A stretch of 63,291 nucleotides of DNA, the filler included, from Octopus bimaculoides (lineage: Eukaryota), in assembly GCF_001194135.2 (NCBI RefSeq). It is 5 parts of 5 records of this genome, joined end to end, with 100 filler letters (N's around TTAATTAATTAA, not from the genome) between each part and the next. Parts side by side here need not be neighbours in the genome. Positions count along the whole stretch, not along the records: positions 18,689 to 49,435 come from NC_068984.1; 4 more parts are not named here. One strand, written 5' to 3'. Every line of letters begins with the position of its first letter. Position 1 is the first letter of the stretch. The notes under the pieces were generated by a model. It searched no databases. It worked only from the letters and a program-made list of their open reading frames with translations, and was not told the origin of the DNA. Position numbers and translations under genes: made by a program. This document shows positions 27,732 through 47,990 of the stretch, one piece after another.

Positions 27732-29029
27732 NNNNNNNNNNTAATAATAATAATAATAATAATAATATTAATGGTTTCTGATTTAGGCACAAAGCCACCA
27801 ATTTGTTGGGGAATGGCTTAATCGATATTATCGACTCCAGTACTTTATTAACTGGTACTTTATTTTAGCGACCTCGAGAGGATGAAAGGCAAAGTTGACC
27901 TTGGCGGGATTTGAACTCAGAATGTAAAGAGCCGGAAGGAGTACCGTACAGAAGTTCCGACGCTCTGACAATCCTGCCAGTTCGCCATCTTAGTAATAAC
28001 AATAATAAAGGTTTCATATTTTGGCACATGGCCAGCAATTTTAATGCAGGAATTCAGTCAATTACATCGACCCCCAGTACTCAACTGGTACTCATTTTAT
28101 CGACCCCAAAAGGATGAAAGGCAAAGTCAACCTCGCGGGAACTGGAACACCGAACGTAAACGTGAAGTCAGAAGAAATACTGTTAAGCATTTTGCCTGAC
28201 TAGTTAACGTTTCTGTCAACTCGCCGCTCTAGTAATAACAATAATTATTATAACAAGTTTGAAAGAATATTAACAGTAACAACTATAGACGTTTTGGACA
28301 TTCGACTAACAGATAAAATTTTGAAGTAAAATTATTGCCATTGTTTCGTTTAAAAACCACCTTCACTTCCTTCAGTTNNNNNNNNNNNNNNNNNNNNNNN
28401 NNNNNNNNNNNNNNNNNNNNNNNNNNNNNNNNNNNNNNNNNNNNNNNNNNNNNNNNNNNNNNNNNNNNNNNNNNNNNNNNNNNNNNNNNNNNNNNNNNNN
28501 NNNNNNNNNNNNNNNNNNNNNNNNNNNNNNNNNNNNNNNNNNNNNNNNNNNNNNNNNNNNNNNNNNNNNNNNNNNNNNNNNNNNNNNNNNNNNNNNNNNN
28601 NNNNNNNNNNNNNNNNNNNNNNNNNNNNNNNNNNNNNNNNNNNNNNNATATATATATATATATATATATATTAGACAAAAGTGATAACAAAGCCAAGGAC
28701 ATTTATAAGGAAAGAGATATAGATATAGTCTTACACCTATTTCTGGGATATTATGGATATCCCGTCATCAGAGACGATGTGAGATGGTTAAATAGAGGTG
28801 AATGTTTGAGTTCGAAATAAGGAATTATTATCGAAGAGGAGAAGAAAGGGAATATAGAGGGAAATAAGAGAATGAAAGTAGGAATAAAATATAAAACATT
28901 GTAGTTGCAGTTCCATTATTCAAGTAAAGTGGTGTCTAGAAGTGGTAAAAAAGTATTCTGTGCATTTCCTTATAAATGTCTTGAAAACTCCTCACAGGCC
29001 TGGCTTTGTTATCTCTTTTGTCAAATATA

Positions 29030-30300
29030 TGTATTTGTGATTCTTGATTGGTCCGTACAGGAAATCCACTCCATAGATATCAAAACCCGCAAAATCCTGA
29101 CAACAACTGGGAACTTCCCCAGAAACAGTGATGTTGACAGACTCTACCTGAGAAAAAATGGAGGTGGTAAAGGCCTGAGGTCAGTGCAGACGGCCTTCGA
29201 ATGTGGTATCACTCAGGCAGCACCTGCTAAACATCAACAGCAGAGATAAATATATAAATGCAGTGCTAAAAGGTGAAGTGAGCAACCTGTTGGCAGTGAG
29301 CTCTTCAAGAAGAACTCTCTTCCTGATGATCTCCTATAAGGCCTCAAAGCAGCTGGGCTCTCTTACCTCAGAGAAGACCTGGGTGGAAAGCACTCAGCGT
29401 ACAAAAAAAGACTATGCGTGGGTATGTTGCCCGGAAGCTTGAAGAAGACAGTAGAATTGATATGAAGCGCAGCCTCTCTTGGACACAAGACCACTACTCG
29501 CATCACACTTTGAGGGCTATGCGTTTGCAATCCAGGAACAGGAGATTACCACAAAGTACCTGGTGAACAAGAGAGACAGTGGCGCTCTTGTAATCCCAAG
29601 GTGCAACCGCATGTGTAGACTATGTCATGTTTCTGTGGAAGATAACGCATGTGATTAGCAACTGTCCTAAATGCCGTCACAGTACTACCTCTCTATGCGG
29701 CATGATGTTGTTGCTAAAACAATTTACAATGCCATCCGCAAAAAAGGACTGTCATGAAATAAACTTAGAAAATCCATCTGTTATGGAATACATTCATAAA
29801 CACCAACATAAGGGATACTGGTGGAATATTCCATCAAAACTTCTGTCACATGTAAACATAACAGGCCAGATATTGCTGTTTGGGACAGAAGGGCAAAGGT
29901 ATGTACCATCATAGAGGTCAGCTGTCATGCGGATATAAATATCTCATTGAGAATCAAAGAAAAAGAGGATATCTATGGACAGCTGCTTCGAAAGCTCCAG
30001 CTTCTATATCCAGACTATGAATTCATATTCATACCAATAATAATTGGAGCATAAGGTTTTGTTAGTAAATGCTTAAAGGAAGATGTAGATAAACTGGGAT
30101 TTTCAGAAAGAGAAATCGACCGGGTAATTCGTACATTACAAGTGCAATCTATGTGTGGAACAGTAAAAATATGCAAGATTTTTCTCAGGTTCCAAATGTG
30201 AATTTGTCTGCGTTAACTACATCCCAAAGATGGAGCCTTGTATCTTTGTTGGAAACCGGCTCCCTCCTCAGTGAAAGATTTATAATAATTAAAAAATAAA
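29030..30300 (+). mobile_element. R4/Dong-type non-LTR retrotransposon 3' part (RLE endonuclease), decayed
   Basis: It shows IDIKTRKIL...SDVDRLYL..GGGKGL, FAIQEQEITTKY, a CCHC knuckle (CRLCH..VED.THVISNCPK), RHDVVAKTIY, HNRPDI..D and IIEVSC...KEKEDIY...IPIIIGA. Frameshifts are present. Confidence 0.9.
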
Positions 30301-30359
30301 AGAGATATACATACACACATACACACACATATACATACATACACACATATATATACATG

Positions 30360-30405
<46 letters not shown>

Positions 30406-30929
30406 TATATCTTTTATCTTTTACTTGTTTAAATCATTAGAGTGTGGCCATACTGGGGCACCGCATTGAAGGATTTTAGTCGAACGAATCGACTCTAGTG
30501 CTTCTCTTTTTTTTCTTTAAACCTGGTACTTATTCTATCCGTCCCTTTGCCGAACCGCTAGATTGCAGGAACGTAAACACACCAACACCAGTTGTCAAGC
30601 AGTGATAGGGAACAAACACAGAAACAAAGACATGCGCATACACACGCACGCGGGCATGCACACGCACACATACACACACGTATACACATATACACACACA
30701 CACATACAACAGGCTTCTTTCGGTTTCCGTCTACCAAATCCACCCAGAAGACAGAGACAGGTGAAGGAACAACAAACAAAGTGTACTAGTTTGATGCTGA
30801 GGAAAACTGGAAAAGAAACATGGAGAGAAGAAAAAAATAACGGAGAGAGAAAATAAAAACGTGTCTGAATTAACGGTTTCACATGTTGATTTGACCGGCT
30901 TTAATGATTTTATTATAAAACTAACTTAC

Positions 30930-31001
30930 CGCTCTCTCCCAAAGGATATTGGTCGATAGCAGGACGCGCCAACTTTTTGCAACTACCAATCATTGTGTTA
31001 C
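30930..31001 (-). CDS. Next coding exon of the same candidate gene: (G)NTMIGSCKKLARPAIDQYPLGES+G (phase 1 in, phase 1 out)
   Basis: The minus strand reads cgtctttctttgatAG|GT AAC ACA ATG ATT GGT AGT TGC ... GAG AGC G|GTAAGT. The 72-nt exon is phase-compatible with the 34865 donor and supplies the sixth Cys. Confidence 0.7.
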
Positions 31002-31563
31002 CTATCAAAGAAAGACGATATTTAACAATGAATAAAGAACTGAAGCTAAAAAGAGAATTATAATATGATAAATAGGTGTTAGTGGAACGGTGTGGTTAAG
31101 AATTGGTCGTTACTTCTTCAAAATTAAGAGAAGGAAGGATGACATTGGATAAACTGATTCCAAGTGCAATGCGTCTAGTAAGAGACAGGCTGGTCACGAT
31201 TAGGATGCCTTTGATCTTTGTCCTACTTAACTGGAACTGACTTATGGCCCAAAAAACAACAGATGCTACTACAACAACTTTTCTGGGTACCTATATGGTG
31301 CTATATAAGCTGGGTTGTTCAGAGTTTGGCTTCTTGCCCAAGACAACGATACTACTTACACTCACATACCAATAGAGAGAAATGGTGTTAATTTTAGCCA
31401 CTTTCCGATTTAAAGCCTGGTATTCTAGCCAATTGCTCGAGTTGATCGAATTTTGTTTTTGTTGCTTAGAACCAGCTTTGAGCAGGTCTATGGATCAAAG
31501 AAATACTCTTCATTAAAACATTCCGCATCCGCGTTTGTCTTCAAATATCGGCGCTTCTCCGTA

Positions 31564-31615
<52 letters not shown>

Positions 31616-32461
31616 NNNNNNNNNNNNNNNNNNNNNNNNNNNNNNNNNNNNNNNNNNNNNNNNNNNNNNNNNNNNNNNNNNNNNNNNNNNNNNNNNNNNN
31701 NNNNNNNNNNNNNNNNNNNNNNNNNNNNNNNNNNNNNNNNNNNNNNNNNNNNNNNNNNNNNNNNNNNNNNNNNNNNNNNNNNNNNNNNNNNNNNNNNNNN
31801 NNNNNNNNNNNNNNNNNNNNNNNNNNNNNNNNNNNNNNNNNNNNNNNNNNNNNNNNNNNNNNNNNNNNNNNNNNNNNNNNNNNNNNNNNNNNNNNNNNNN
31901 NNNNNNNNNNNNNNNNNNNNNNNNNNNNNNNNNNNNNNNNNNNNNNNNNNNNNNNNNNNNNNNNNNNNNNNNNNNNNNNNNNNNNNNNNNNNNNNNNNNN
32001 NNNNNNNNNNNNNNNNNNNNNNNNNNNNNNNNNNNNNNNNNNNNNNNNNNNNNNNNNNNNNNNNNNNNNNNNNNNNNNNNNNNNNNNNNNNNNNNNNNNN
32101 NNNNNNNNNNNNNNNNNNNNNNNNNNNNNNNNNNNNNNNNNNNNNNNNNNNNNNNNNNNNNNNNNNNNNNNNNNNNNNNNNNNNNNNNNNNNNNNNNNNN
32201 NNNNNNNNNNNNNNNNNNNNNNNNTATATATATAAACAACGTGCAACACGAGACGGAACTCAGAGTGGACTGTCAAGTATTGATATAATAAACATAATTA
32301 TCCACTCTACCCAACATACTAAGTTCTAAATGAGATAATGTTTGTCCTATGTGAAAGCTTCATCTATTTTAGTTCGCTGGTAATTCGCTGCTTCCTCTCA
32401 ACCTCCCGGTACCCTTCATATCCGGTTAAATTAATTTACTTCTGTAAATTACCAGAGAGAA

Positions 32462-32583
32462 TGACGTAAAATCCTGAGCGTGATTCATAAGAAGACACCC
32501 TAGTTATAAATAGAGATGTGACTTAACTGAAGGAAAATCAACTAACTGGACATTACGTCAGCTTTAGGAAAACTGACGTAATG
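32462..32583. promoter_or_regulatory. Three TGACGTAA (CRE/PAR-bZIP-like) sites, two forming an 11-bp inverted repeat
   Basis: CATTACGTCAG-11 nt-CTGACGTAATG at 32551-32583, TGACGTAA at 32462 and TATAAATA near 32506. Confidence 0.3.
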
Positions 32584-32978
32584 TTTGTATTCATATGTTT
32601 ATGACCTTTTTTTCGGCTTGGCTTGATTAATAGTAAATATAAATTCAGATATTCTATTACATAATCTTGAGTCTTCCCTTAAATTTTGTCTTTTTCTCAT
32701 ACGTCAACACTTGCATATCTGTATATTCTCGTATATTCTTGGTGTTACTATAGCGTGCGATGTGCCGGTACATTATTTTACTATAACGTGCGTCTGCTAG
32801 TACATTTTAAAAACTATAATGTTAGGTTCACAAGGCCATCTAGCTTATAGTATGCAGTCTAGCGGCAGTGGAGTAGCTAGAGAGTGTACCGAACGGGCAG
32901 TCCTTGAGTTTGCTCCACCTCCCAGCTTATACAGTGAGTGCCGCTTGTAGTGTAAGTTGTGATCTTCCCATATCTATC

Positions 32979-33069
<91 letters not shown>

Positions 33070-33792
33070 CTATAGCAGAAGTACTAAGACTAATAACACA
33101 CATACTTGTCTTCCATTTTATCAGTACCGTTTCAACGTGGGCTCAATAGCGGCTTCACTTTTTGGCACAAGGCCAGAAATTTCGGGGAAGTGGGTAAATC
33201 GATTACATCGACCCCAGTTCACAACTGGTACTTATTCTATCAAACCCGAAAAGACGAACGGCAAAGCTGACCTCGGCGGAATGTGAACTGAGGATGTAAA
33301 GACGGACAAAATATCGCTAAGCATTTTGCTCGGAATGCTTACGATTCTTCCACCTCACCGCTTTTGCGAGCTCATTATCGAAACTCTTTTCTTTCTTTTT
33401 CTTTACCTCACTGCCTCCTGGGACATAGTTGATTACATCAACCCCAGTATTTATTTTGTTGACCACAGAAAGGTGAAAGCAATGTCAAAGTGGGATTCGA
33501 ACTTTGAACGTTACTGACTCCCACCATGTATTTATTCTGATATCCTACCGTTACTACTCTCCGCCTTGTCATGAATAATATTATTCTTTTTGTCAGATAA
33601 AATATGAAATAGTAAAAAAGAAATCGGGAGAGTTTAGCGACCTTTGTTGTTATCGTCACTGTCTACAGTTTTGTTGTTTTGTTCCAATTGCTTTCAAATT
33701 TGGTATATGGATTAAGCTCTGTATACTAATTATGAAAATGAAATTCATTAAAAAGTTATTAGCCTTTAAACTTTGCAAAATTTGGGCATTTT

Positions 33793-33925
33793 AGCCAATC
33801 AGAAGCGAGTATTTTACATATCACCGTGAAGTTCTGTTAGCAGAGTAAGCAAAGAAGCACCACGTGTTTCATAGCTGATTGTGAAGAACTCTGTTTCCAT
33901 AGTGACCAAAGATGCTGCGCATGCA
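33793..33925. promoter_or_regulatory. Cluster of promoter-type motifs
   Basis: AGCCAATCAG (33793), CACGTG (33861), GTTTCCATAGTGAC (33893, X-box-like) and TGCGCATGCA (33916, NRF1-like) fall within 135 bp. Confidence 0.3.
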
Positions 33926-33962
33926 CACAAGGAGTGTAAACAAGACCTGCATGCTACACTCA

Positions 33963-34250
33963 GTTCTTCCAGGAACCACTATCTTCAGTGATCTGTGATG
34001 AGCTTATAATCATATCCCAGAAATCGTGGGCTTTGATTTCAAACATAGAACTGTGAACCATAGCATTGAATTTATAAACTCAAAAGATGGGACTCACACT
34101 CAACAAATTGAGAGTACCAGGGCATTTTTAAGGCGTGGAAACAAACGTCGGTGTTGGACATACCTTCCCATGGTTGACTCTTATTTTTGTGAATTTATGT
34201 GGAGAAGGAGATATGAGAATGATAATTTATTTTATAAAATCCTAAGTGTA
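33963..34250 (+). mobile_element. Merlin (IS1595/ISXO2-like DDE) transposase fragment
   Basis: VLPGTTIFSDL**AYNH...HRTVNHSIEFINSKDGTHTQQIES...DSYFCEFMWRRRY matches the conserved Merlin/ISXO2 C-terminal motifs and carries two stops. Confidence 0.85.
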
Positions 34251-34302
34251 TTGCAAACTTTCGCTCTTGAATTTTTAAAACTAATAAATGTCTGTTTTAA
34301 GC

Positions 34303-34518
34303 AATGTTTTGACAGTTATTTCTAGCATCTCCTGTTGGTTTGATCATAGCTTTAAATATTTAATTTGCTCGCGAATGTTTTAATGTTTTTCACTGTTTAC
34401 TTTGCTCGTGTATATTTTAATGTTTAGACTGTTATTTCTAGCAACTCCTGCTGGTTTGCTCGTAGCTTTTAAATATTTGATTTGCTCGCGAATCTTTTAA
34501 TGTTTTCCACTGTTTACT
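34303..34518. repeat. Direct tandem duplication, ~117-bp period
   Basis: gttatttctagca..cctg.tggtttg...aaatattt.atttgctcgcgaat...cactgtttact occurs twice. Confidence 0.85.
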
Positions 34519-34864
34519 GGAACTAGGTGAACGTTTTGATATGCCGGTGCCCATCCCCGCTTTCTCCCTACTGTGACAGATGATGGAAGAGGCCGCAAAC
34601 GCGCTGTTTTCTGTTTGGCTGAAAATTCTAACAATTATCAAACTTTGAACACCAGTAACGTTTTCACATTTTTTTTTTTGGAATATATGAATAACAAATT
34701 CGGATTCAGCGTCAAAAATTACATTTATATGATTCATTAAAATTTTATTTCTAAATTTTGACATGCAGTGACGATAACCACAGAGATCCGAATTTAGTAA
34801 ATTTTGTTTTAAAAAAGAATAAGGTAAAAGAAATCACAACAAAATTTGCAAAACTATGGCTTAC

Positions 34865-34955
34865 CTTTGTTGAAGGAATCATAATCGAGAGCACAGACTT
34901 CGGACATTTCACAACATTGACTAGTGGTCAAACATTGTCCACCGGACGGTACACA
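34865..34955 (-). CDS. Internal coding exon of a candidate knottin/ICK-type cysteine-rich peptide precursor: CVPSGGQCLTTSQCCEMSEVCALDYDSFNK+G (phase 0 in, phase 1 out)
   Basis: The minus strand reads ttttgtttatacgattattttctAG|TGT GTA CCG ... AAC AAA G|GTAAG. The exon is 91 nt and open, with Cys spacing C-x6-C-x5-CC-x5-C. It is too short for the ORF track. Confidence 0.75.
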
Positions 34956-35729
34956 CTAGAAAATAATCGTATAAACAAAATTTATCCTTGATTTATATAT
35001 TTTGTGACTGTATACGCCATTGTAATTTTGTACATCAATGATGGTTTCAAATTTTGGCACAAGTCCACATACATCAATAATAAAAATGAAATAGGGAACG
35101 TTTATCATTTAATCATTTGAAAGTTAAAGTGATAGAACAATGGATCACGTGATCAAGATGGGAAGAATGACTTCCCTTTGCAAATACAGACAGGACACAG
35201 ATGTGTGTCAATAGCCAGCTGGAGGAGATGTTCTCCTGGGGCTAAAAGCAACAGTAACATTCACCCTAAGGGTTTAGCTGCATTTAAGTGGCAAATATAC
35301 TTCAAATGGACTAAATGTCTTATAGCAAATAATTCCGACCTTCTATCTTTTTAGTTTACTTTCTTCTCGAGCTGACTTTATCCCTCCCATGCTTTCCACA
35401 CTCCCAGAATTAATAAATTAAATCCTCTACAAATTTGTAGTTTTCTAACAAAATAGAATATATTAACTATAACTCTCTGATCGAATCCTGGTGGAAATAA
35501 CAACAGAGCTTGTGTATATAGATGCCTTACAGTATTTCAAATCTCTCCGAGATTAGCGTTACTTACCCCTCTCCTACCCTTCAGAGTAAGTAAAACAAAT
35601 CCCATTCATATACTGGGACCGATTCCACTGATCGATCGTATCTTCTCCTTGGTCCAAACTTGTGCAGTCAGGAAAATCCATATTTATATCTTCGTGTGTG
35701 TGTAACTGTACATTTATTTGTCTATATGA

Positions 35730-35760
<31 letters not shown>

Positions 35761-35875
35761 TGTATGTATGTATGTATGTATGTATGTATGTATGTATGAA
35801 TGTATGTATGTGTGTGTATGTATGTATGCATGTGTGTGCATGTGTGTGTGTGAGAGAGAGAAAGAGTGTGTGCGA

Positions 35876-35908
<33 letters not shown>

Positions 35909-36148
35909 TTTGTGGGATAAATATGGATTGTAAATAAATACCAGTGTATTAGGAATATTATCACACTCAGTATCATACAATATTTATTGAATATATTTCG
36001 GACTGCTGGAATAGTAAACAGGAAAAGAGGAAGGAGAGAGAGATATAAAGAGAGAGAGAGGGAGAGAGAGAGAGAAAGGGAGAGAGAGAGTGTGTGTGTT
36101 TGCGCGCGCGCATGAAGTACATTTCATTTGGATTAAGACATATATATG

Positions 36149-36206
<58 letters not shown>

Positions 36207-38376
36207 GTATGAATGGTATTAAGTTGTGGAGAAATAAAGCCAAAACACGATTTACACATTGCGATCAAGAGTGATTGACCTATAACACGCATTATACAAT
36301 CATTATTTCTATATTATATACAGGATAGTTTCATTTAGTTTCATTCAGTAGTTTCCATTTATTGACGTGGCGTGTCGAAATTTTATTGGAGAGCAAAATG
36401 TTTCATTGGCAGATTAGTGTTTATATTTAAAGCAAGATGTGTATATTTTCGGCCATGAAAATAAGAAACCAGGGTGGAAATAATGAAGCGTTAAACTGAA
36501 TACTTTTTACGAGATTTCTTCAAACCAAGCGTCCATAAAACTTACATTCCACAAAGTTTCCCAATACTTCGTGCAACCTTCCATTCTTGTAGTATAATTC
36601 CGCTCACAAGACGGATACAGTAAAGAAAGACCCAGAACTAGACTAGTACTTTCATTTATTTGCGCCGGTAAGATGTAAATTCAAAGTTGAACTCGGCGGG
36701 ATTTGAACTCAGAGTGTTTGTGATAGTCTCACAAACTTAGAATGTGTTTGTCCCACAAACTAAATAGCGTCTCACTAACGATTCTATCAAACTAGCATAG
36801 AAAATAAACTTGAATCGTTTAGAAATGTTGTTATTTTAATCATGGTCCATTTCCTTAATGTGCTTATTCTGTGAATTAAAAAAAAATGCAGGTAGGAGGG
36901 TTTGATAGAGGATATCATGTTGCTTGGCAGCAGTTACAGTTCGTACCAGTTTAAAACCTCTTTCGCAGTGAGACATCTTAAAGTAGACATTACAGTTCTT
37001 AACTATCTCGATATTTCAACCGATCACTTTCGTAAAGTATAATAAAAGTATATTAGACTGTTTTCCTCGGTCTCTTTATCACTGATCGTCAGTCAGTCAG
37101 CCTGTCTGTTTCTAGCACGCGCGCGCGCGCACACACACACGGTGGAACACAGAATTTAGTTAATATATACCACTTCGAATTATCGTGGCGTTTCTGTGAT
37201 TTATGTAGTTTCTGCTCTCGGTCTCAAATAACCCCACTTCTCAATTTCGTCTTTGTATTGGACGATAAATACCTCTCAATACTCTCAATACTCCTAATGT
37301 CTCCCCCCCCCCACTTTTTAAAAAATACTAAGTAGCTTAATTGCAGTTGTATAACGGTTAAGTGAGGGCGGAAATAGCAGATGTTAGAAATGGTGGTATA
37401 TGCGAATTCAACAACGTAAGTCAGTGAGCGACTGTACCTGTATCAATAATAACAATTTCTCAGGCTATTTCAGTCAATCTAATAAATCTCTGCGCTCAGG
37501 TATATTATTTTATCGTTCCACAAAGAGTTGGATGACAATGGTAATCCTGATGAGATTTGAATTCAGAAAATAAAGTGATGCATCTAACTGATATTTTTTT
37601 TGTCGACGTTTTATAGGGTTTATCACCAACTTTTCCGTTAATAATCCTTTCTCCTAAAAGCACAAAGCCTGACATTTTTGGGGAGGGGTCTAGTCGGTTA
37701 CATCGACCTCAGTGTTTCACTGGTACTTAATTCATCGACCCCGAAAGGATGAAAGGCAAAGTCGACCTCGGCGGAATTTGAACTCAGGATGTAAAGACAG
37801 ACGAAATACCGCTAAGCATTTCGCCCGGCATGCTAACGTTTCTGCCAGCTCACCGCTTTTACTTTTCTGTTAATAATTCTTTCTGCTAAAGGCACAAGGC
37901 CTGAAATTTTGGGGGAGGGGACTAGGCGATTTCATCGACCCTAGTGTTTCACTAGTCCTTAATTTATCGACCAAGAAAGGATGAAGGGCAAAATCGACCT
38001 TGGCAGAAGTTGAACTCAGAACATAAAGACGGACGAAATGCCGCTAAGCATTTTGTCCGGTATACTAACGATTCTACCAGCTCGCCGCCTTTACTTTTCT
38101 GTTAATGATAGCATTAATTTTATCTAGTACAAGTACAAGGCAACGAATTTTGAAAGACAAATTTTACTGATTAAATCCAAATTTAGACTGCGGCTAATTT
38201 TATTGGTTCCGCCAATATATATAAGACTAAGTTCCTCGTTGAGTGGTCGGTGGTATGAGGAACGTTAGCTTGTTAGGATAAGGCTTCTAATTTAGACGGT
38301 TGAAGCTGTGATGCTGTCTCGGTGTTGTGGCTTGTACGGCAATACGATTTGCTGCGGATGCGAGTTGCGAATCCGG

Positions 38377-38386
38377 TTGATGATGT

Positions 38387-38432
<46 letters not shown>

Positions 38433-38645
38433 GCTACTACTACTACTATTTCATGTGTATGTATATATATTCATCCATCCACACACACACACACACACTG
38501 ACTGGATAAGAGAAGTAGAATAACAAAACAAATGTTTAATTCATTAACTGACAGCTGTTTCGTCAAACATATATAAATGAATATTCTCTTATCCAGTCAG
38601 TGTGTGTGTGTGTGGATGGATGAATATATATACATACACATGAAA

Positions 38646-38698
<53 letters not shown>

Positions 38699-38708
38699 AC
38701 ATCATCAA
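38377..38708. repeat. Near-perfect inverted repeat, ~130-bp arms and 69-bp spacer
   Basis: 38377-38514 is the reverse complement of 38584-38708 apart from microsatellite length and one substitution within the (CTA)n. Confidence 0.9.
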
Positions 38709-40059
38709 ATGTTGGAGAAAGTACTCAAGAACTAAGCAGTATTTGTTTGTAGTTTCCAGAGAAAAGAGAAGATAATTTCAAGGAATTAAAAATTAATCCC
38801 ACAAAATTAATTTCCATGATTTGTGGAAAGTTTGATCTAATAAGCTGAAACATATCCAGTGGTTATTTGTCCACAAATAAAGCTTATATGCGCGCGCGCA
38901 CATAACTCTTGCATTTTCAATCATTAAACTAGAGTACTTCAGCAAAGATCGGTAAACACTTTTGCACTCTCTCTCTTTCTCTCTCTATCTTTATATGTCT
39001 CTCTTTCTCTTTCTCTTTCTCTTTCTTTCTCACACTTTCTTTCTCACACTTTCTTTCTCACACTTTCTTTCTCACACTCTCTCACACACACATGAGGTTA
39101 AAGATGTGTTTCTCACAAACTCGAGGAAGATGTTAACGTTGGCAGGATGTACAGACTCCGTTGGTTCATAACCGTTAGGAAATAGCTTCAAAATACCTGT
39201 ATTGTACCATACTCGTATAAATAAGCAAGTCATTGCATCGCTATTTGCACGCGATGCTGTCATTATTTGCACGCTATAGTGTCACGCTACGTTGTAACAA
39301 AATTGCAGGCACAGAACTTCAGACAGTAAACATAGGCTAAATGATTACCTTAAATGTCATGCTCCTTTGTAAATGTATCTTAAAAACCAACGTAGTCAAC
39401 GGCACAGTAGAACAGTTATATGATAAGAGCATGAGGATCAATTGGTTTAAACTGGTGTTTTAAATTTACCAATCAAATGTTAAAAATAGAACTCGTTTGA
39501 GCTAATTTTGAAGGCAGTCAAAGTATAAAAGCTTCAGAAATTTAGATACCAAAGAGGACTCCTGCCTTCGATAAACGAATCGCTACTAGTCTGTCCCCCA
39601 TTCAGCATGAAGACATGTCGTTAATTGTTATAAAAGCTAATAAGCTTCACATACTTTAACCATCACAATGTGCTTGTAGAGTAAAAAATTTAAATATATT
39701 TCTTCGTTTCTACTTGTTCTAATATAACATGAATTATGAAGTTGCACTGTAAGGTATTACCTCGTTTGATTTCTCAATGCTTTTCGCGTCCATTGAACTT
39801 TGAACTTTGAATGCTATTTTAAATACTTATCAATTATTGATATTAGATGTACGGAACGAAGTTCTGTTTTGTTAACGAAATTAATAGATCCGGAGAAATG
39901 AAAACGTAGCTTTTTCTTCATGTGTTTACAATTATTGTGACAACACATTTCTCTAGCCAACGTTTTTATTGAAGTTATTAATAATATCGCCCATGATTTT
40001 ACCAAAATACAAAAGAAACACTGAAACCCTTAACCGAAAATGTCGATGATGTCACATTT

Positions 40060-40880
40060 CTGAAGATATTACGCGTATCATCAGTATCTGCCCTAAAATG
40101 TCATTTTGGTACTACTTTCCAATGCACCATTTTGTTGAAGTTAAAACAACATACAAGGCTGTCCTGAAACAAATATATAGAAACACCTCTGTAGTTGAGT
40201 ATATACATTCCTTGTGTCTCAACACAAGGAATATTAGTGAAATATTCCCAATACATGTAGTGTACCCTTGGTGGTCAGCTACCATAGGGGTGACAATCAC
40301 TTCTAGATTAAGTTAAGTTGAGGTGGATATGGAAGTTTGAAATTTAAATCAACGAATAAAGAATTAGGTGTTCAGAATATACAGATTTATTATTTCTTTT
40401 TTTCTTTCCCCGCCTCTCCGCGTTATAAAGATCTTAAGATTACCAAATTCTATCAAATTCAAAGATATCTGATATTGTTCTTTTGGTAAGAAAACAGAAA
40501 TTATGTACACGAGGGAGTGCTGAAAAGTTCTTGGTTTTAAGGGTCTCGCGAAAGGCCTGGTTGGAGGTCCTATCGTCCGAGTTCTTTTGCAGGGCTGAGA
40601 AAAACGGAAGGACCGCTGCAATAAGTGTGTGAATCTGAGAGAGGAATATGTTGAATAAAATCATGATTAACTTATCCTTCTGTATTTTCCTTTACACAAA
40701 GCCAGAAACTTTTCAGTACTTCCTTGTAGTTATCGAGGACAGCTGCTTCACATATGTGAATGTTTGTTTGAAAGCCAAGGAGAAAGAAAATATTTATGGG
40801 CATTTAAAACTCTTGGCTTCTATACCTAGCTTATAAATTCACATTTACACTGATGCCTTTGGTTATGTTAGTAGATCTCT
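40060..40880 (+). mobile_element. Older copy related to the 29030 R4 element, interrupted by the mariner MITE
   Basis: EDITRIISICPKMSFWYYFPMHH..KTTYKAV lies before the MITE and IEDSC..NVCLKAKEKENIYGHLKLL after it, collinear with 29630-30000. Confidence 0.7.
40509..40728 (+). mobile_element. Non-autonomous mariner MITE, second copy
   Basis: acgagggagtgctgaaaagtt ... aacttttcagtacttccttgta, with the same internal sequence as the 22356 copy. Confidence 0.8.
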
Positions 40881-41442
40881 TAATGGCAATCCCAAAATGC
40901 TGACACGAACTTTGCAAACACAATTACTAAGAGAAATAATAAAAACAAGTAAAACTTTTTCTAAGTTCAACATGTAACTTCTGCTCGTTGTTGTTGCCAA
41001 CTTCAACCAATGATTTTCTTTTCCTTGTCAGAAACCAGCTCTTTCCTTATAGGAAGAATTCAAATATATAAAAAAAAAAAAAANNNNNNNNNNNNNNNNN
41101 NNNNNNNNNNNNNNNNNNNNNNNNNNNNNNNNNNNNNNNNNNNNNNNNNNNNNNNNNNNNNNNNNNNNNNNNNNNNNNNNNNNNNNNNNNNNNNNNNNNN
41201 NNNNNNNNNNNNNNNNNNNNNNNNNNNNNNNNNNNNNNNNNNNNNNNNNNNNNNNNNNNNNNNNNNNNNNNNNNNNNNNNNNNNNNNNNNNNNNNNNNNN
41301 NNNNNNNNNNNNNNNNNNNNNNNNNNNNNNNNNNNNNNNNNNNNNNNNNNNNNNNNNNNNNNNNNNNNNNNNNNNNNNNNNNNNNNNNNNNNNNNNNNNN
41401 NNNNNNNNNNNNNNNNNNNNNNNNNNNNNNNNNNNNNNNNNN

Positions 41443-41487
<45 letters not shown>

Positions 41488-42082
41488 ATACTTGTCGCTC
41501 CACCATCGCTTGACAACCGATGTTGGTGTGTTTACGTTTCCGTAATCTAGCGGTTCGGCAAAATCGATCGACAAAATAAGTACTAGATTTACAAAGAATA
41601 AGTCCTAGCGTCGATTTCCTCGACTAAAGGCGGTGCTCCAGCATGGGTGCAGTCAAATGACTGAAACAAACAAAAGAAAGTATATATATAGACATACGCA
41701 AGCGTGCATATGCACATACATACATACATACATACATACATACATACATACATAATGCATGCGTACATGCATTTATTTATTTTATTTTATTTTATTTTAT
41801 TTTATTCTAAGTCAGCCTCTGCGGTGACTTGACAGAATCTTTAGAGTAGCGGGCAAAAATACTTGCGGAATTTTATTACGCTTACATGTTCAAATTCCGC
41901 CGAGCAACTTCGCATTTCATCTTTATATACAGTACCGGTTAGATATTAGTTTGATTTAATATTCTTGTAAGACATCCTAGATACTACTGAAATTTTAATG
42001 AACGAAGATTTTTTATTTATTTTCGTTTACATATTCAAAGATAGATAGATAAATAGATAGATAGATAGATACACATATTCAA

Positions 42083-42158
<76 letters not shown>

Positions 42159-42264
42159 NNNNNNNNNNNNNNNNNNNNNNNNNNNNNNNNNNNNNNNNNN
42201 NNNNNNNNNNNNNNNNNNNNNNNNNNNNNNNNNNNNNNNNNNNNNNNNNNNNNNNNNNNNNNNN

Positions 42265-42329
<65 letters not shown>

Positions 42330-44063
42330 GAGAGGAAATTTGTCGGTTATACCTATTATTATCAATCGTAATAGGCATGTAGCGATTAATAGCGTTTAAT
42401 CAGTGTTATTACGAGTGATGCATTCTTAAACAGTATTTATTCGAAAATTTGCTAAGATCCCAAGAATTATTATTATATGATAGTAAAATCATTTCAGAAT
42501 TGGCGTCTTTCGGACGCGTCATTAATTTATATCCGAGAAAGGAATTAATTTTATTGGGAGATAATAAGAGGCTTTCGACGATTACGACATTTGATGTGAA
42601 TATTAATTTACGATTGCAGTGAGCGCTGCAGAATAAGATGTAGAATAATAGTCGGTACAGTCCACTACATGATTTCGATTTTCATTTGAATGTCATTTCA
42701 TTATATTTACGACATAGATGTTCTTGGGAAAAGCATGAAAGTTGCAATACTTCATTTTAATTTCATTAACCCTATAACGTCTGTTATTAACGATTCTTGA
42801 CATTTTAAATACTACTGTCTTATTGTAACAACCCCACCTGAAAGCTAAAGACTTTGACGAGTTCTTCCGATTCTTAACATTTGAACAACTTTATATGTAT
42901 GTGTCTGTGTGCATGGTTTTGCGTTCAGTCCCACTGTATATCGTTTTGGGCAAGCGGTCGACCAGTAAATAAGTTATAGAAATATAGAATTTGGTAGATG
43001 AAAAAAATTTAGTAGAAGCTCGTCGTATGTATGTATGTATGTATGCATGCATGCATGTATGTTGCATTTACCGCTCACAGCTTGGCAATCGGTAGAGGTT
43101 TGTTTATGTTCCCATAACGTACGTCACTTAGCGGTCCAATCAGAAAAACAGAAACCGAAAGAATAAGTACCAGATGAAAAGTCAATACTGGGATCGCTTT
43201 CATCGATTAAAAAAGAAAAAAAAAACAAGTTTCAAGGCGGTGCCCCTGTATGATCGCAGTTCAATGATTCAATGACTGAAACTAGCTATAGAATATATAT
43301 ATANNNNNNNNNNNNNNNNNNNNNNNNNNNNNNNNNNNNNNNNNNNNNNNNNNNNNNNNNNNNNNNNNNNNNNNNNNNNNNNNNNNNNNNNNNNNNNNNN
43401 NNNNNNNNNNNNNNNNNNNNNNNNNNNNNNNNNNNNNNNNNNNNNNNNNNNNNNNNNNNNNNNNNNNNNNNNNNNNNNNNNNNNNNNNNNNNNNNNNNNN
43501 NNNNNNNNNNNNNNNNNNNNNNNNNNNNNNNNNNNNNNNNNNNNNNNNNNNNNNNNNNNNNNNNNNNNNNNNNNNNNNNNNNNNNNNNNNNNNNNNNNNN
43601 NNNNNNNNNNNNNNNNNNNNNNNNNNNNNNNNNNNNNNNNNNNNNNNNNNNNNNNNNNNNNNNNNNNNNNNNNNNNNNNNNNNNNNNNNNNNNNNNNNNN
43701 NNNNNNNNNNNNNNNNNNNNNNNNNNNNNNNNNNNNNNNNNNNNNNNNNNNNNNNNNNNNNNNNNNNNNNNNNNNNNNNNNNNNNNNNNNNNNNNNNNNN
43801 NNNNNNNNNNNNNNNNNNNNNNNNNNNNNNNNNNNNNNNNNNNNNNNNNNNNNNNNNNNNNNNNNNNNNNNNNNNNNNNNNNNNNNNNNNNNNNNNNNNN
43901 NNNNNNNNNNNNNNNNNNNNNNNNNNNNNNNNNNNNNNNNNNNNNNNNNNNNNNNNNNNNNNNNNNNNNNNNNNNNNNNNNNNNNNNNNNNNNNNNNNNN
44001 NNNNNNNNNNNNNNNNNNNNNNNNNNNNNNNNNNNNNNNNNNNNNNNNNNNNNNNNNNNNNNN

Positions 44064-44101
<38 letters not shown>

Positions 44102-44764
44102 CTTATAATTTAGAACAAACAATAAGCTGTCATTATAGTATTCGGAGTTTCTGCCCTTTTACCTATCGTATAAAGGATTATTTGTTTTATTTTAATTGTT
44201 ATTGTTTAACCCATGCCATCTTTGATCAAGTAAACCCATGCTCGTAGGGTTCAAGGCGTGTCCATCTCGTATTTTTCCAGCCCTATTATATTTATAATCA
44301 TATTAACTAATGATTAACTAATCTCAGATGATAGCGTGTTGTTTGAAGGAGATTTATGTGATAGTTGCACTGGGTTGCTGATTTGGTATCCTGACATGTA
44401 TATAGAACTCTCAAAGGAAGTCTCGTGCAGCCTCGTGGAAATCACGTGAGGAGAACGCTACTAGGAACGGTATAGCGTGGTTCTCGAAAAGTGAACCGTG
44501 AAACTTGCAACATTTGTCCTATAAGAGTGAAGCACAATTTAGTTGCTAGTTCCAGAACGTCGAACAACCATGTTTGAAGCTTCCTCTTTCGTTCGTCTCC
44601 AATTCAATAGTTAAGTCATTTTTCGACATATGATGGGTAAGTTTGGAAGAATACTTTTGCCACCATGGGTAATTTGATAAAAGATAAATCATAATTGTTG
44701 TACGTACGTCATATTGCCTGATATTTCCACGCTAACAAAAATGTCTTAATATTATTGTAGCAAT

Positions 44765-45148
44765 TAAGGTAGCGAGCTGGTAGAATCGTTTTGTATGCCG
44801 GACAAAATGCCTAGCGAAAATTCCCCAAAGGTCGACTTTATCTTCCATCATTTCGGGGTTGATAAAATAAGTACCAGTCGAATACTGGGGTCGATGTAAT
44901 CGATTTACCCCCTCCCCGAAATTGCTTGCCTTGTGCTAAAATTTGAAACCAATATGGATGCTGGGCCAAATGCTTAGCGGTATTTCGTCCATCTTCATGT
45001 TTTGAGTTCAAAATTCCGCCGAGATTGACTTTGCCTTTCATCCTTTCGGAGTCGATAAAATAAGTCCCAATTGAACATTGAGGTCGATGTAATCGACTTA
45101 CCCCTTCCCCGAAATTGCTGGCCTTGTGCCAAAATTTGAAACCAGTAT
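44765..45148 (+). mobile_element. SINE family C, two tandem copies
   Basis: The head is ggtagcgagctggtagaatcg...gagttcaaattccgccgag, the central block is cctttcatcctttcggggtcgataaaataagtaccag, and the tail is ggccttgtgccaaaatttgaaacc. Other copies lie at about 2440-2630, 10805-10905, 27780-28230, 33160-33360, 37655-38090 and 61830-62000 (all minus) and 41810-41935 (+). Confidence 0.85.
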
Positions 45149-46202
45149 TATTGCAGCAATTATGGCGATATATTCATTTGAAACAATTTGCTGTAAGTGG
45201 ATTTTAAAAATAGGCACAATATAAGAAATGCTTGTCGATTAAGTATTTGACTAGTACTTATTATACTTATTTAATCAATGAAGTTTCGATTAAACTACCT
45301 TCGACCTAGGAACTCATTCATAGCTAAAAATTTTATGAACTGGTTTTTGACGGCGCCGATCATCACTGTATAGTCTCCCTGCACTGTTAGCGTTTGTTTC
45401 ATGTACTTGCATACTTGCATAGTAAATAGCCAAATTTATGAAAGATAAGAGTGATTGCTTCGTATACCACGTAGTAGATATAAAATTCGAAAAGATCAAT
45501 ATGCACAGGCAGTGATAGTTGCTGATACATTTATGTGTTGAACTAAATATGTTTAATTAGATTTTTAATGTTCACTTCATTAGATATATTAACATTGACT
45601 TAGCTTTTGTTTTTTCATGCGAATGGCATCTCTGAGCAATGAAACCCAGTGAGTTATAATTTTTTTTAACTAGTCAAGCATTAAACCGTTGCTTTAAAAA
45701 AAGTACCAATACAAATAGATTATTTCTATGTGTTCTTTAGATCGAGGTCAAATCTGACATCCAACAAACCTATCTAAAGAATTCCAGCAGTAATCATCCT
45801 ATGTTTTATTGGTGGAGGAAGGGATATTTAAGACTATGTTATCGAATATGTTACTCCAAGATTTTTACAAGGCTGCTATTTCTCACAGGAACAGCAACTA
45901 AGTATAGGTTCCCTCGTTGGTTCGATTATTTTCTATGCTCAGTTCACTAGTTCGACAACCAATCCGCAATATCCCGTCACTTGCATACAAAAAAGTTTGC
46001 GATATTTCTATAGCTTTTTACAATTGTTGCATCTAAAACTAAAACAGTGAACAGAATAAATGAGATTTTCCAGTCCGTATTGATTCTTTTCGGCAGGAAT
46101 TATATTATATTATGGTTCAAGTGGAACAAAAGAAATTTTACCATATTTTAATACATATTCAGTAGTGATTGTTAGCCACTCAGTCAAATACAATTTATCA
46201 AA

Positions 46203-46236
<34 letters not shown>

Positions 46237-46407
46237 CATATGTAGGAGTGTGCATGTGTATGTGTATCTGTGTGTGCGCGCGCGCGCGTATTATTCTACT
46301 GTTAATTATATTCTGATTCATATACTACTGATAAAATTATGACATGAAAACCTATCAAACTTTGAATTTAAATCAATTACACACACTCACACGTACACGT
46401 GTGTGTT

Positions 46408-46468
<61 letters not shown>

Positions 46469-46551
46469 AAATATACATGTGTATGTAAATACATGTGTGT
46501 GTAAATATGTATGTATCTATATGTATGTATGCATGTATGTATGTATGCATG

Positions 46552-46583
<32 letters not shown>

Positions 46584-46745
46584 GAGGATATGAGGTGTTT
46601 TCGTCAGGATGACTCAAACTAATAGGTATGCGTTCTGAGTGCTCAAATAGTTGTGTCACCAAACTCCCAGTGAGAACAGCGGTTGAAGTTGTGGTTGTGT
46701 GATTGTCTTGTTCAAAAACGGCTAGAGGTGGCATCCCTTTGAGTC

Positions 46746-47192: not shown

Positions 47193-47227
47193 ACTTATGT
47201 ATGTATGTATGTATGTATGTATGTATG

Positions 47228-47258
<31 letters not shown>

Positions 47259-47337
47259 TTACATAGATTTATGTAAGTACTGAAGATAATAAGGTTCCAA
47301 AGCACACATACTGGTATAAGAGAGAGAGAGAGAGACA

Positions 47338-47369
<32 letters not shown>

Positions 47370-47380
47370 ATATATGTATG

Positions 47381-47414
<34 letters not shown>

Positions 47415-47420
47415 TGTATG

Positions 47421-47468
<48 letters not shown>

Positions 47469-47922: not shown

Positions 47923-47925
<3 letters not shown>

Positions 47926-47990
<65 letters not shown>

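What the first reader, a model, noticed from the sequence alone, without database searches (positions are those of the whole stretch)
30930..34955. Hidden spliced gene encoding a knottin (ICK)-framework peptide
Seen in sequence: two minus-strand exons with pyrimidine-rich AG acceptors and GTAAG donors join in phase to give CVPSGGQCLTTSQCCEMSEVCALDYDSFNKGNTMIGSCKKLARPAIDQYPLGES, with Cys spacing C-6-C-5-CC-5-C-16-C. Established: C-C-CC-C-C is the inhibitor cystine knot framework of framework VI/VII conotoxins, spider toxins and agatoxin-like neuropeptides, and it loosely resembles the first Cys module of prohormone-3/ITG-like precursors. Inference: this is a secreted cephalopod neuropeptide or venom-like peptide with an unusually long fourth loop, easily missed because both exons are under 100 nt.
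Basis: partly seen in the sequence, partly recalled or inferred. Interest (0 to 1): 0.85.

Follow-up and report, generated by a model that had tools for sequence, protein, structure and literature searches.

The report
Octopus prohormone-3 (ITG-like) gene exons

Summary
Minus-strand exons 34955..34865 and 31001..30930 join in frame to give the 54-residue peptide. An Octopus mRNA contig and cuttlefish mRNA contigs use exactly this junction.

The gene is not hidden. It is O. bimaculoides A0A0L8IHB5 (a truncated model), O. sinensis XP_029635144.1 and O. vulgaris CAI9720809.1, all labelled 'uncharacterized'.

Exon 1 lies beyond the piece. The coding part of exon 4 falls in assembly gap 28378..28647. 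The gap inside the finding (31616..32224) is purely intronic.

The protein is homologous to protostome prohormone-3/ITG-like precursors:
- Platynereis: BLASTP E=3e-8, and z=6.1 under Cys-preserving shuffles.
- Wasp ITG-like: hhalign probability 95.5%, E=1.4e-8.

It has the 12-Cys form reported for bivalves. Purifying selection is strong (omega about 0.05-0.15) between octopus and cuttlefish, which argues against a fast-evolving venom toxin.

The inhibitor cystine knot (ICK) fold could not be tested, because the AlphaFold model had pLDDT 44.6. Knottin and Dickkopf profile hits are below threshold.

Verdict: a new member of a known kind, of modest interest.

The parts
34865..34955 (-). Coding exon 2 (91 nt, phase 0 start, phase 1 end). 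It encodes C39-K68 plus the first base of G69, which gives the first five cysteines of module 1.
   Evidence: sequence and translation; donor PWM score 11.0, in the top 0.5%; tblastn of P0001; mRNA contig L014 nt 776-870 matches 34955..34861 at 96.8%.
30930..31001 (-). Coding exon 3 (72 nt, phase 1 to phase 1). It encodes the rest of G69 to S92 plus the first base of G93: the sixth cysteine of module 1, the conserved dibasic KK, and the linker RPAIDQYPLGES.
   Evidence: donor score 10.4; 100% identity to P0001 residues 69-93. L014 nt 865-939 matches 31003..30929 at 98.7%.
30973..30978 (-). Codons AAA AAG (K77 K78) directly after Cys6. The site is KK in Octopus and KR in both decapodiform orthologues, so it is a candidate prohormone-convertase site.
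   Evidence: alignments. Cleavage itself is inference.
31002..34864 (-). Intron 2, including assembly gap 31616..32224. An (AGT)n microsatellite sits at the gap edge and SINE-like repeats lie within the intron.
   Evidence: flanks are collinear with L011 50560-49598 and 48128-47333, and the gap corresponds to ~1.47 kb in O. sinensis; the transcript skips the whole intron.
28648..30929 (-). Visible part of intron 3. It contains retrotransposon-like ORF remnants on the + strand and microsatellites.
   Evidence: collinear with L011 53747-50575. ORF list.
28378..28647 (-). Assembly gap that must contain the rest of intron 3 and the coding part of exon 4. In O. sinensis that coding part is 158 nt including the stop and encodes the second 6-Cys module, GDECTDSSECGPGLCCRK...CIERSRANNEIYRK. 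The real missing length is ~1.1 kb, not 270.
   Evidence: window 28377 corresponds to L011 54839 and window 28648 to L011 53747. L011 exon 4 is 54669-54826; the window sequence from 28377 downward begins 12 nt after the O. sinensis stop codon.
28323..28377 (-). First visible part of the 3' UTR of the last exon. It probably continues to lower coordinates. Candidate poly(A) signals ATTAAA at 28045..28040 and AATAAA at 27864..27859 were not verified.
   Evidence: L014 nt 1109-1163 are 100% identical to 28377..28323..
34956..49435 (-). Part of intron 1. Exon 1 (114 nt; signal peptide plus N-terminal peptide MKLIASGFLFCLCCYMASAWIPRLHANSFWPLSRASSR) is not in the piece. By synteny it lies ~10.8 kb beyond 49435.
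   Evidence: no tblastn hit for residues 1-38; in L011 exon 1 is at 10001-10114, whereas window 48900 aligns to L011 20842. Intron 1 is ~35 kb in O. sinensis.

Best explanation
The two exons are coding exons 2 and 3 of a four-exon, ~42-45 kb, single-copy coleoid cephalopod gene. Its 144-aa product is the cephalopod member of the protostome prohormone-3 / ITG-like family of cysteine-rich, neuropeptide-like secreted precursors.

Shown:
- The splice junction is used in mRNA.
- The full protein has this order: signal peptide (cleavage predicted after ..MASA); a conserved N-terminal peptide (WIPRLHANSFWP..SSR); 6-Cys module 1 (this finding); a KK/KR site; the linker RPAIDQYPL; 6-Cys module 2; and a short tail.
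- All 12 cysteines and long stretches of sequence are conserved between octopus and cuttlefish under strong purifying selection.
- The protein is collinearly similar to annelid and insect prohormone-3.
- It lacks the middle 4-Cys module, as reported for bivalve prohormone-3.

Inferred:
- The protein enters the secretory pathway and folds with six disulfides.
- It may be cut at the conserved basic sites (R38|C39, and K77-K78 or K-R after Cys6). That would release an N-terminal linear peptide and one or two disulfide-rich modules.
- The products would act as extracellular, probably neuroendocrine, signals.

The receptor and the physiological role are unknown for the whole family.
For: Exhaustive HMMER search:
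- P0001 (144 aa) is 98% identical over all 54 residues.
- Cluster look-up names it XP_029635144.1 / CAI9720809.1. It also finds A0A0L8IHB5_OCTBM, which is identical to the window, including D61 and the read-through tail GKLVL*.

Transcripts:
- Octopus mRNA contig L014 maps to four exons in L011/L012 and to window exons 2 and 3 and the 3'UTR.
- A 64%-identical orthologue, P0006, is present as ~1 kb mRNA contigs in 16 runs. At least three of these runs are Sepia esculenta larval RNA-seq.
- A third lineage is represented by L013.

Selection:
- O. bimaculoides versus O. sinensis, exons 2+3: 6 substitutions, 5 synonymous at third positions and 1 non-synonymous, omega 0.05.
- Sepia versus species X: omega 0.08.
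- Octopus versus Sepia, finding region: omega ~0.15 with dS near saturation.

Family:
- Platynereis prohormone-3 (sequence from PMC3890597 supplement): BLASTP E=3e-8, 38% identity over 66 aa spanning the signal peptide, N-terminal peptide and module 1.
- Window 54-mer against Platynereis prohormone-3 under Cys-preserving shuffles: z=6.1, with 0 of 2000 shuffles reaching the observed score.
- Wasp ITG-like (PMC5831470 supplement): BLASTP E=1e-5 on the C-terminal module, with identical loop lengths CC-x13-C-x8-CI.
- hhalign, cephalopod profile against ITG-like/prohormone-3 profile: probability 95.5%, E=1.4e-8.
- PMC8398477 states that oyster and scallop prohormone-3 have a signal peptide, short N-terminal peptides detected by mass spectrometry, and a Cys-rich peptide keeping 12 of the 16 cysteines. 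The cephalopod protein has the same layout.
Against: - No bivalve or gastropod prohormone-3 sequence could be obtained, so the comparison with the molluscan form rests on a published description.
- Module 1 alone is not significantly similar to insect ITG-like module 1 (z=1.8 and 0.2). The link to insects rests on the C-terminal module, which is not readable in this window because it lies in a gap, and on the Platynereis bridge.
- The ITGQGNRIF-type C-terminal peptide that named the family is absent.
- No tissue-resolved expression or peptidomic data were available, so 'neuropeptide' is by family analogy only.
- Orthology as opposed to paralogy was not tested by phylogeny.
- The first word-index protein search found nothing. 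That was a tool false negative, as later calls showed.
Confidence: 0.85

Rival explanations
1. It is a stand-alone knottin (ICK) toxin or venom-like peptide of the posterior salivary gland, as in conotoxin framework VI/VII or spider toxins.
For: - The C-C-CC-C-C framework is present.
- There are weak sub-threshold Pfam hits to Toxin_30 (E=0.064), Omega-toxin (0.49) and Toxin_12.
- A few ICK toxins appear among the non-significant fold-search hits.
- A conserved KK/KR after Cys6 could release the module.
- ITG-like peptides are abundant in wasp-spider venom (PMC7407881).
Against: - All knottin profile hits are below the gathering thresholds.
- The module is part of a 12-Cys precursor.
- The gene is single-copy in the locus, with no paralogous exon in 30 kb. 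No other relative was found in 1.84e9 representative proteins.
- It is strongly conserved between octopus and cuttlefish with omega 0.05-0.15, unlike fast-evolving, multi-copy toxin genes.
- It is expressed in whole Sepia larvae.
- The AlphaFold model is too poor to show a knot.
Confidence: 0.05
2. It is a divergent Dickkopf/prokineticin/colipase-fold protein, such as a Wnt-pathway modulator or an astakine-like cytokine, rather than a prohormone-3 member.
For: - The second module (GESGDECTDSSECGPGLCCRKAF) resembles DKK1/2 C-terminal subdomain 1.
- Pfam PF21481 gives E=0.003-0.025.
- PDB DKK1 chains give E=0.02-0.05.
Against: - The scores (15-18 bits) are below the Pfam cutoff of 27.
- The match covers only ~25 residues and 3 cysteines.
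- A family profile of the module makes the DKK match weaker, not stronger (E=0.55).
- The 10-Cys colipase pattern and the Dkk CRD1 are absent.
- Similarity to prohormone-3 is far stronger and collinear over the whole protein.
Confidence: 0.05
3. The exons are chance open frames or a dead pseudogene fragment in repeat-rich intergenic DNA.
For: - The piece is full of microsatellites, SINE-like repeats and retroelement remnants.
- Exons 1 and 4 cannot be seen in the piece.
- The first protein search returned nothing.
Against: - Spliced transcripts exist in Octopus and in two decapodiform lineages.
- Five of the six substitutions against O. sinensis are synonymous.
- The splice sites are conserved.
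- The missing exons are explained by the piece's edge and by gap 28378..28647.
Confidence: 0.02

Closest known systems
Prohormone-3 / ITG-like precursor (Apis mellifera ITGQGNRIF-containing prohormone; Platynereis dumerilii prohormone-3; Crassostrea gigas Cragi-prohormone 3)
   Same: - A signal peptide is followed by a Trp-initiated N-terminal peptide.
- The first module is C-C-CC-C-C with the motif CV.SGG.C.T.S.CC...VCA..D.F, shared with Platynereis.
- The linker QPPIT is matched by RPAID.
- The last module is EC..SSEC..GLCC....RH..(x13)C(x8)CI, shared with insects.
- It has 12 cysteines, as reported for oyster and scallop.
- The C5-C6 loop of module 1 is variable. In Platynereis it carries an alternatively spliced 10-residue insert, and in octopus it carries the intron.
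   Different: - There is no middle 4-Cys module, which is present in annelids and arthropods.
- There is no C-terminal KR-ITGQGNRIF-KR peptide; the tail is ..R(A/V)(N/E)NEI(Y/F)...
- The C5-C6 loop is much longer, 16-17 residues against 7-9.
- A dibasic KK/KR after Cys6 is conserved in cephalopods and absent in the annelid and wasp sequences I could read.
- The precursor is shorter overall, 144 aa against 169-231.
Inhibitor cystine knot peptides (conotoxin framework VI/VII, spider toxins, agatoxin-like peptides)
   Same: Six cysteines in C-C-CC-C-C order with comparable loop 1-3 lengths, in a secreted protein.
   Different: - There is no significant sequence-profile match.
- The disulfide connectivity is unknown.
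- The module is encoded as part of a two-module precursor.
- It is slowly evolving and single-copy.
- The last loop is very long.
Dickkopf 1/2/4 C-terminal (colipase-fold) subdomain 1 and prokineticin/astakine
   Same: The second module shares the motif G..G..C..SS(D/E)C..GLCC.(R/K).F with DKK1/2 CRD2.
   Different: - The match is sub-threshold.
- There are only 6 cysteines per module, not 10.
- There is no Dkk CRD1.
- The resemblance lies in exon 4, outside the readable window.

Membership tests
Prohormone-3 / ITG-like | N-terminal signal peptide followed by a conserved N-terminal peptide starting with Trp | tested here: met
   The same species' annotated protein P0004 and orthologues P0001/P0006 read ...YMASA|WIPRLHANSFWP. 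Platynereis has ...ALG|WSKYYEDSFDELP and the wasps have ...AEA|WGGLFNRFSP. Exon 1 is outside the piece, and the cleavage site is inferred by the -3/-1 rule with no predictor run.
Prohormone-3 / ITG-like | First 6-Cys module homologous in sequence, not only in Cys spacing | tested here: met
   BLASTP against Platynereis prohormone-3 gives E=3e-8. The Cys-preserving shuffle gives z=6.1, with 0 of 2000 shuffles reaching the observed score. The match to wasp module 1 alone is not significant (z=1.8 and 0.2).
Prohormone-3 / ITG-like | Middle 4-Cys module (the 16-Cys form of annelids and arthropods) | tested here: not met
   It is absent in all three cephalopod lineages; only a 19-residue linker separates the two modules. 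PMC8398477 reports that oyster and scallop members also keep only 12 of 16 cysteines, so this is the molluscan form rather than an exclusion.
Prohormone-3 / ITG-like | C-terminal 6-Cys module C-x5-C-x(4-10)-CC-x13-C-x8-C-I | tested here: met
   hhalign gives probability 95.5%, E=1.4e-8, and BLASTP gives E=1e-5. This was tested on orthologues; in this window the coding sequence lies in gap 28378..28647.
Prohormone-3 / ITG-like | C-terminal ITGQGNRIF-like peptide flanked by dibasic sites | tested here: not met
   The cephalopod tails are IERSRANNEIYRK and IEHARVENEIYSN. PMC8398477 notes that many family members lack this peptide.
Prohormone-3 / ITG-like | Expression in nervous or neuroendocrine tissue and peptides detectable by mass spectrometry | not testable with these tools
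   The only evidence is transcript contigs from whole Sepia esculenta larvae and one Octopus run of unknown tissue.
Inhibitor cystine knot (knottin) | Six cysteines in C-C-CC-C-C order | tested here: met
   C-6-C-5-CC-5-C-16-C. The pattern is conserved in Sepia and species X.
Inhibitor cystine knot (knottin) | Disulfides C1-C4, C2-C5 and C3-C6, with the third threading the ring | tested here: inconclusive
   The AlphaFold2 model had mean pLDDT 44.6, and below 50 across residues 16-91. Foldseek against the PDB gave no hit with E<=0.001; the ICK toxins listed have probabilities <=0.28.
Inhibitor cystine knot (knottin) | Match to a curated knottin or toxin sequence family | tested here: not met
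   Pfam Toxin_30 scores 14.0 bits against a cutoff of 24.5. Omega-toxin scores 10.7 against 22. Toxin_12 scores 8.1 against 21. phmmer of the 54-mer against the PDB gave no hits.
Dickkopf / colipase fold | 10-Cys colipase-fold domain reaching the curated threshold | tested here: not met
   PF21481 scores 15-18 bits against a cutoff of 27. DKK1 chains in the PDB give E=0.02, weakening to 0.55 with the family profile. There are only 6 Cys per module.

The most novel reading that the evidence does not exclude
In coleoid cephalopods the prohormone-3 precursor lost the middle module and gained a conserved dibasic site (KK/KR) directly after Cys6. The exon 2+3 module would then be released as a free 38-residue knottin-like peptide hormone, together with a conserved linear N-terminal peptide (WIPRLHANSFWP...). 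That would make it a neuropeptide-lineage ICK peptide of the kind from which venom knottins are thought to be recruited.
Probability: 0.2. Interest if true: 0.5.

Novelty: new member of a known kind. Interest (0 to 1): 0.3.

Why it matters
- It gives a family name to a gene annotated only as 'uncharacterized' in three Octopus genomes.
- It explains why the O. bimaculoides model is truncated: the last coding exon sits in an assembly gap.
- It indicates that the orphan prohormone-3/ITG-like family is present in coleoid cephalopods, in the 12-Cys form reported for bivalves.
- Prohormone-3 has no known receptor or function in any animal. A short, highly conserved cephalopod version with candidate processing sites is a convenient entry point for peptidomics and receptor deorphanisation.

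It is not a new kind of molecule.

Tried and rejected
1. The word-index protein search with the 54-mer returned nothing. This was a false negative, because the exhaustive HMMER search found the gene.
2. A scan for a signal-peptide exon upstream in the piece found none. Synteny explains this: exon 1 lies ~10.8 kb beyond the edge.
3. tblastn of the peptide against the piece found no paralogous exons.
4. P0003, a 492-aa leucine-rich-repeat protein hit at E=8e-4, was rejected as spurious. It has no shared cysteine pattern and its repeats are low in complexity.
5. phmmer of the 54-mer against the PDB gave no hits.
6. AlphaFold2 with a 3-sequence alignment gave pLDDT 44.6, and Foldseek on that model gave nothing significant. 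The disulfide topology is therefore not resolved.
7. The Dickkopf lead was followed with a family profile and became weaker.
8. The supplements of PMC6425005 and PMC8398477 were searched for molluscan or cephalopod prohormone-3 sequences. Only images or truncated files were held.
9. Pfam scans of the larger ORFs around the exons gave no domain.
10. ARAGORN found no tRNA genes.
11. Papers naming run SRR16213286 (Octopus transcript), SRR27666069 (species X), or four further runs carrying the P0006 contig were not found.


Full report
**Observation.**
Reading the minus strand shows exon A at 34955..34865. It is preceded by a pyrimidine-rich tract and AG, with an in-frame TAG as the codon just before the first Cys codon, and it is followed by AAAG|GTAAGC. 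Exon B is at 31001..30930, preceded by ...tctttctttgatAG and followed by GCG|GTAAGT. Joined at 34865/31001 (91 + 72 nt), they translate without a stop to CVPSGGQCLTTSQCCEMSEVCALDYDSFNKGNTMIGSCKKLARPAIDQYPLGES plus one base of the next codon.

With a generic metazoan splice PWM, both donors fall in the top ~0.5% of the 1581 GT sites on that strand of the piece. The acceptors are moderate, at roughly the 85-96th percentile. At comparable thresholds only 13 stop-free AG..GT exon-frames of 60-200 nt exist on both strands, and only this one has four or more cysteines.

**The gap inside the finding.**
The piece is collinear, in reverse orientation, with gap-free loci from O. sinensis (L011, GCA_006345805.1) and O. 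vulgaris (L012, GCA_951406725.2).
- Window 30637-31607 aligns to L011 50560-49598.
- Window 32230-33022 aligns to L011 48128-47333.

Gap 31616..32224 therefore corresponds to ~1.47 kb of intron in O. sinensis. An Octopus mRNA contig (L014, Logan SRR16213286) joins the two exons directly, as do the cuttlefish transcripts. The two sides are continuous and in frame, and no exon is hidden in that gap.

**What the gene is.**
The word-index protein search found nothing, but that was a false negative. The exhaustive HMMER search of 1.84 billion representatives found P0001 (144 aa), 98% identical over all 54 residues, and P0002. The cluster look-up identified them as follows:
- P0001 is XP_029635144.1 'uncharacterized protein LOC115210635' (O. 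sinensis) and CAI9720809.1 (O. vulgaris).
- P0004 is UniProt A0A0L8IHB5 (O. bimaculoides, 97 aa). It is identical to the window translation, including Asp61. It ends GESGKLVL*, which is a read-through of the exon 3 donor into the intron (GGT AAG TTA GTT TTA TAA).

The window is therefore O. bimaculoides, and the same exons and junction are already in a public, truncated gene model. The gene is not hidden, only unnamed.

**Gene structure.**
In O. sinensis the coding exons are 114, 91, 72 and 158 nt (435 nt including the stop). Intron 1 is ~35 kb and the gene spans ~45 kb. The splice-site sequences at exons 2 and 3 are the same as in the window.
- Exon 1 (signal peptide and N-terminal peptide) is not in the piece. 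By synteny it lies ~10.8 kb beyond 49435.
- Exon 4 falls in assembly gap 28378..28647. Window 28377 aligns to L011 54839, and window 28648 aligns to L011 53747.
- The L011 exon 4 coding part is 54669-54826.
- The window sequence from 28377 downward begins 12 nt after the O. sinensis stop codon.
- That sequence is 100% identical to the 3' UTR of mRNA L014.

This explains the truncated UniProt model. No other gene is annotated within 10 kb of the gene in either Octopus genome.

**Conservation and selection.**
A profile search added P0006 (145 aa, 64% identity). It is present as ~1 kb mRNA contigs in 16 sequencing runs. At least three of those runs (SRR20545814, SRR23936181, SRR25097171) are Sepia esculenta larval RNA-seq according to the papers that cite them. 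L013 carries a full-length orthologue from another decapodiform sample.

All 12 cysteines are invariant across octopus and cuttlefish, together with these blocks:
- AWIPR.H.NS.W
- SSRCVPS.GQCLTT.QCCEMSEVC
- YPL
- SSEC..GLCCR...RH
- CGEPEGPV.CIE

Between O. bimaculoides and O. sinensis, exons 2+3 differ at 6 of 163 positions. Five are synonymous third-position changes and one is non-synonymous (D61G). The Nei-Gojobori omega values are:

| Comparison | omega |
|---|---|
| O. bimaculoides vs O. sinensis, exons 2+3 | 0.05 |
| Sepia vs species X | 0.08 |
| Octopus vs Sepia, finding region (synonymous sites near saturation) | ~0.15 |

This is the signature of a constrained endogenous protein, not of a rapidly diversifying toxin.

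**Family.**
Pfam gave only sub-threshold hits:
- Toxin_30 (E=0.064) and Omega-toxin for module 1.
- Dickkopf C-terminal subdomain 1 (E=0.003-0.025, 15-18 bits against a cutoff of 27) for module 2.

DKK1 chains were the best PDB sequence hits at E=0.02.

PMC8398477 describes oyster prohormone-3 as a signal peptide, short N-terminal peptides seen by mass spectrometry, and a Cys-rich peptide keeping 12 of the 16 cysteines of arthropod and annelid members. I retrieved the Platynereis prohormone-3 sequence from the supplement of PMC3890597 and three wasp ITG-like sequences from the supplement of PMC5831470. The comparisons gave:
- BLASTP of the octopus protein against Platynereis: E=3e-8, 38% identity over 66 residues. 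The match covers the signal peptide, the N-terminal peptide and module 1 (CVPSGGQCLTTSQCCEMSEVCA against CVNSGGKCFTSSECCKGYVCA).
- The window's 54-mer against Platynereis: z=6.1 above Cys-preserving shuffles, with 0 of 2000 shuffles reaching the observed score. The similarity therefore goes beyond the cysteine framework.
- Against wasp ITG-like, the C-terminal module: E=1e-5, with identical loop lengths (CC-x13-C-x8-CI) and shared SSEC, GLCC and RH.
- Module 1 against wasp ITG-like: aligns collinearly, but not significantly on its own.
- Profile-profile comparison of cephalopod against annelid+wasp alignments: probability 95.5%, E=1.4e-8.

The middle 4-Cys module of annelids and insects is absent, matching the published description of bivalve members. 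The eponymous ITGQGNRIF peptide is also absent, as in many members. A family profile of the C-terminal module matched DKK1 more weakly (E=0.55), so the Dickkopf resemblance remains only a lead. I conclude that this is the coleoid cephalopod member of the prohormone-3/ITG-like family.

**How it probably works.**
Shown: the encoded precursor has a hydrophobic N-terminus ending ..MASA, and 12 conserved cysteines in two C-C-CC-C-C modules.

Inferred:
- It is co-translationally secreted and forms six disulfides.
- It may be processed at the conserved Arg38 before Cys39 (RRSSR in decapodiforms) and at the KK/KR that follows Cys6 in all three cephalopod lineages (window 30978..30973).
- It then acts as an extracellular, probably neuroendocrine, signal. 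This fits the family's detection in bee brain, oyster visceral ganglia and lobster eyestalk and brain.

No receptor or function is known for any family member.

The ICK fold could not be tested. AlphaFold2 with the three available sequences gave mean pLDDT 44.6. Foldseek gave no significant match, although a few ICK toxins appear among the noise.

**Verdict.**
'Hidden', 'stand-alone knottin' and 'venom-like' are not supported. Novelty is limited to naming an unnamed gene and adding cephalopods to the lineages with a prohormone-3/ITG-like gene. The most interesting open point is whether the conserved dibasic site releases module 1 as a free knottin-like hormone.

Noticed in passing
window 28378..28647 (gap) and 28323..28377: The last coding exon of the gene (the second 6-Cys module and the stop codon) lies inside this assembly gap, whose real size is ~1.1 kb rather than 270. 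This explains why UniProt A0A0L8IHB5 (O. bimaculoides) is truncated and ends in intron read-through, GKLVL*.
   Followed up: yes
window 34864..34753 (intron 2 start, minus strand); L012 43741-43853: O. vulgaris has a second annotated product (CAI9720810.1, P0002, 106 aa) that is simply retention of intron 2. In O. bimaculoides the same read-through stops after three codons (GKP*), so this 'isoform' is not conserved and is probably an annotation artefact or unspliced RNA.
   Followed up: partly
window 30973..30978 (minus strand): A dibasic KK directly follows Cys6 and is KR in both decapodiform orthologues. It is absent from the Platynereis and wasp prohormone-3 sequences. It is a possible cephalopod-specific convertase site separating the two Cys modules.
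   Followed up: partly
Platynereis prohormone-3 variants (PMC3890597 supplement) vs window intron 31002..34864: Platynereis has two transcript variants that differ by a 10-residue insert (DDLF[GRHVAKRIEP]GYC versus DDLFAGYC). The insert sits in the same C5-C6 loop that carries the octopus phase-1 intron, which suggests an old shared intron position. No annelid genome was available to check.
   Followed up: no
window 27769-28278, 33160-33365, 37639-38129, 44818-45165 (and others): A ~170-230 bp interspersed repeat occurs many times in both orientations within the gene's introns and 3' flank. Each copy matches 10-20 sites in the O. sinensis and O. vulgaris loci at 68-92% identity, so it is SINE-like. 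ARAGORN found no intact tRNA gene.
   Followed up: partly
window 28905..30054 (+) and 48083..49277 (both strands): These are runs of ORF fragments with related motifs (DVDRLYLRKNGGGKGL and DTDRLSLSRRKGGRGL; ...IIEVSC...IIGA and ...VIGSLG). From memory they look like decayed non-LTR retrotransposon C-terminal regions. No Pfam domain was detected.
   Followed up: partly
window 31575..31615 and edges of the other N runs (23445, 27393, 28378, 41084, 42159, 43304): Every assembly gap in the piece is flanked by microsatellite sequence, such as (AGT)n, (TA)n, (TG)n, (GA)n or (TATG)n-like. The gaps therefore mark unassembled simple repeats. The gap lengths are underestimated where they could be checked: 609 against ~1469 bp, and 270 against ~1091 bp.
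   Followed up: partly
octopus and cuttlefish protein C-termini (exon 4, not readable in the window): The tail after the last Cys, ..R(A/V)(N/E)NEI(Y/F).., is conserved, and in Octopus it ends in RK. MAFFT aligns NEIYRK with the insect NRLFKR of the ITG peptide. This could be a remnant of the ITG-like C-terminal peptide or a coincidence.
   Followed up: no
tool behaviour: The word-index homology search reported no candidate for the 54-mer, although identical or 98%-identical proteins (P0004, P0001) are in the same collection. A negative from that tool on short spliced peptides should not be trusted.
   Followed up: yes
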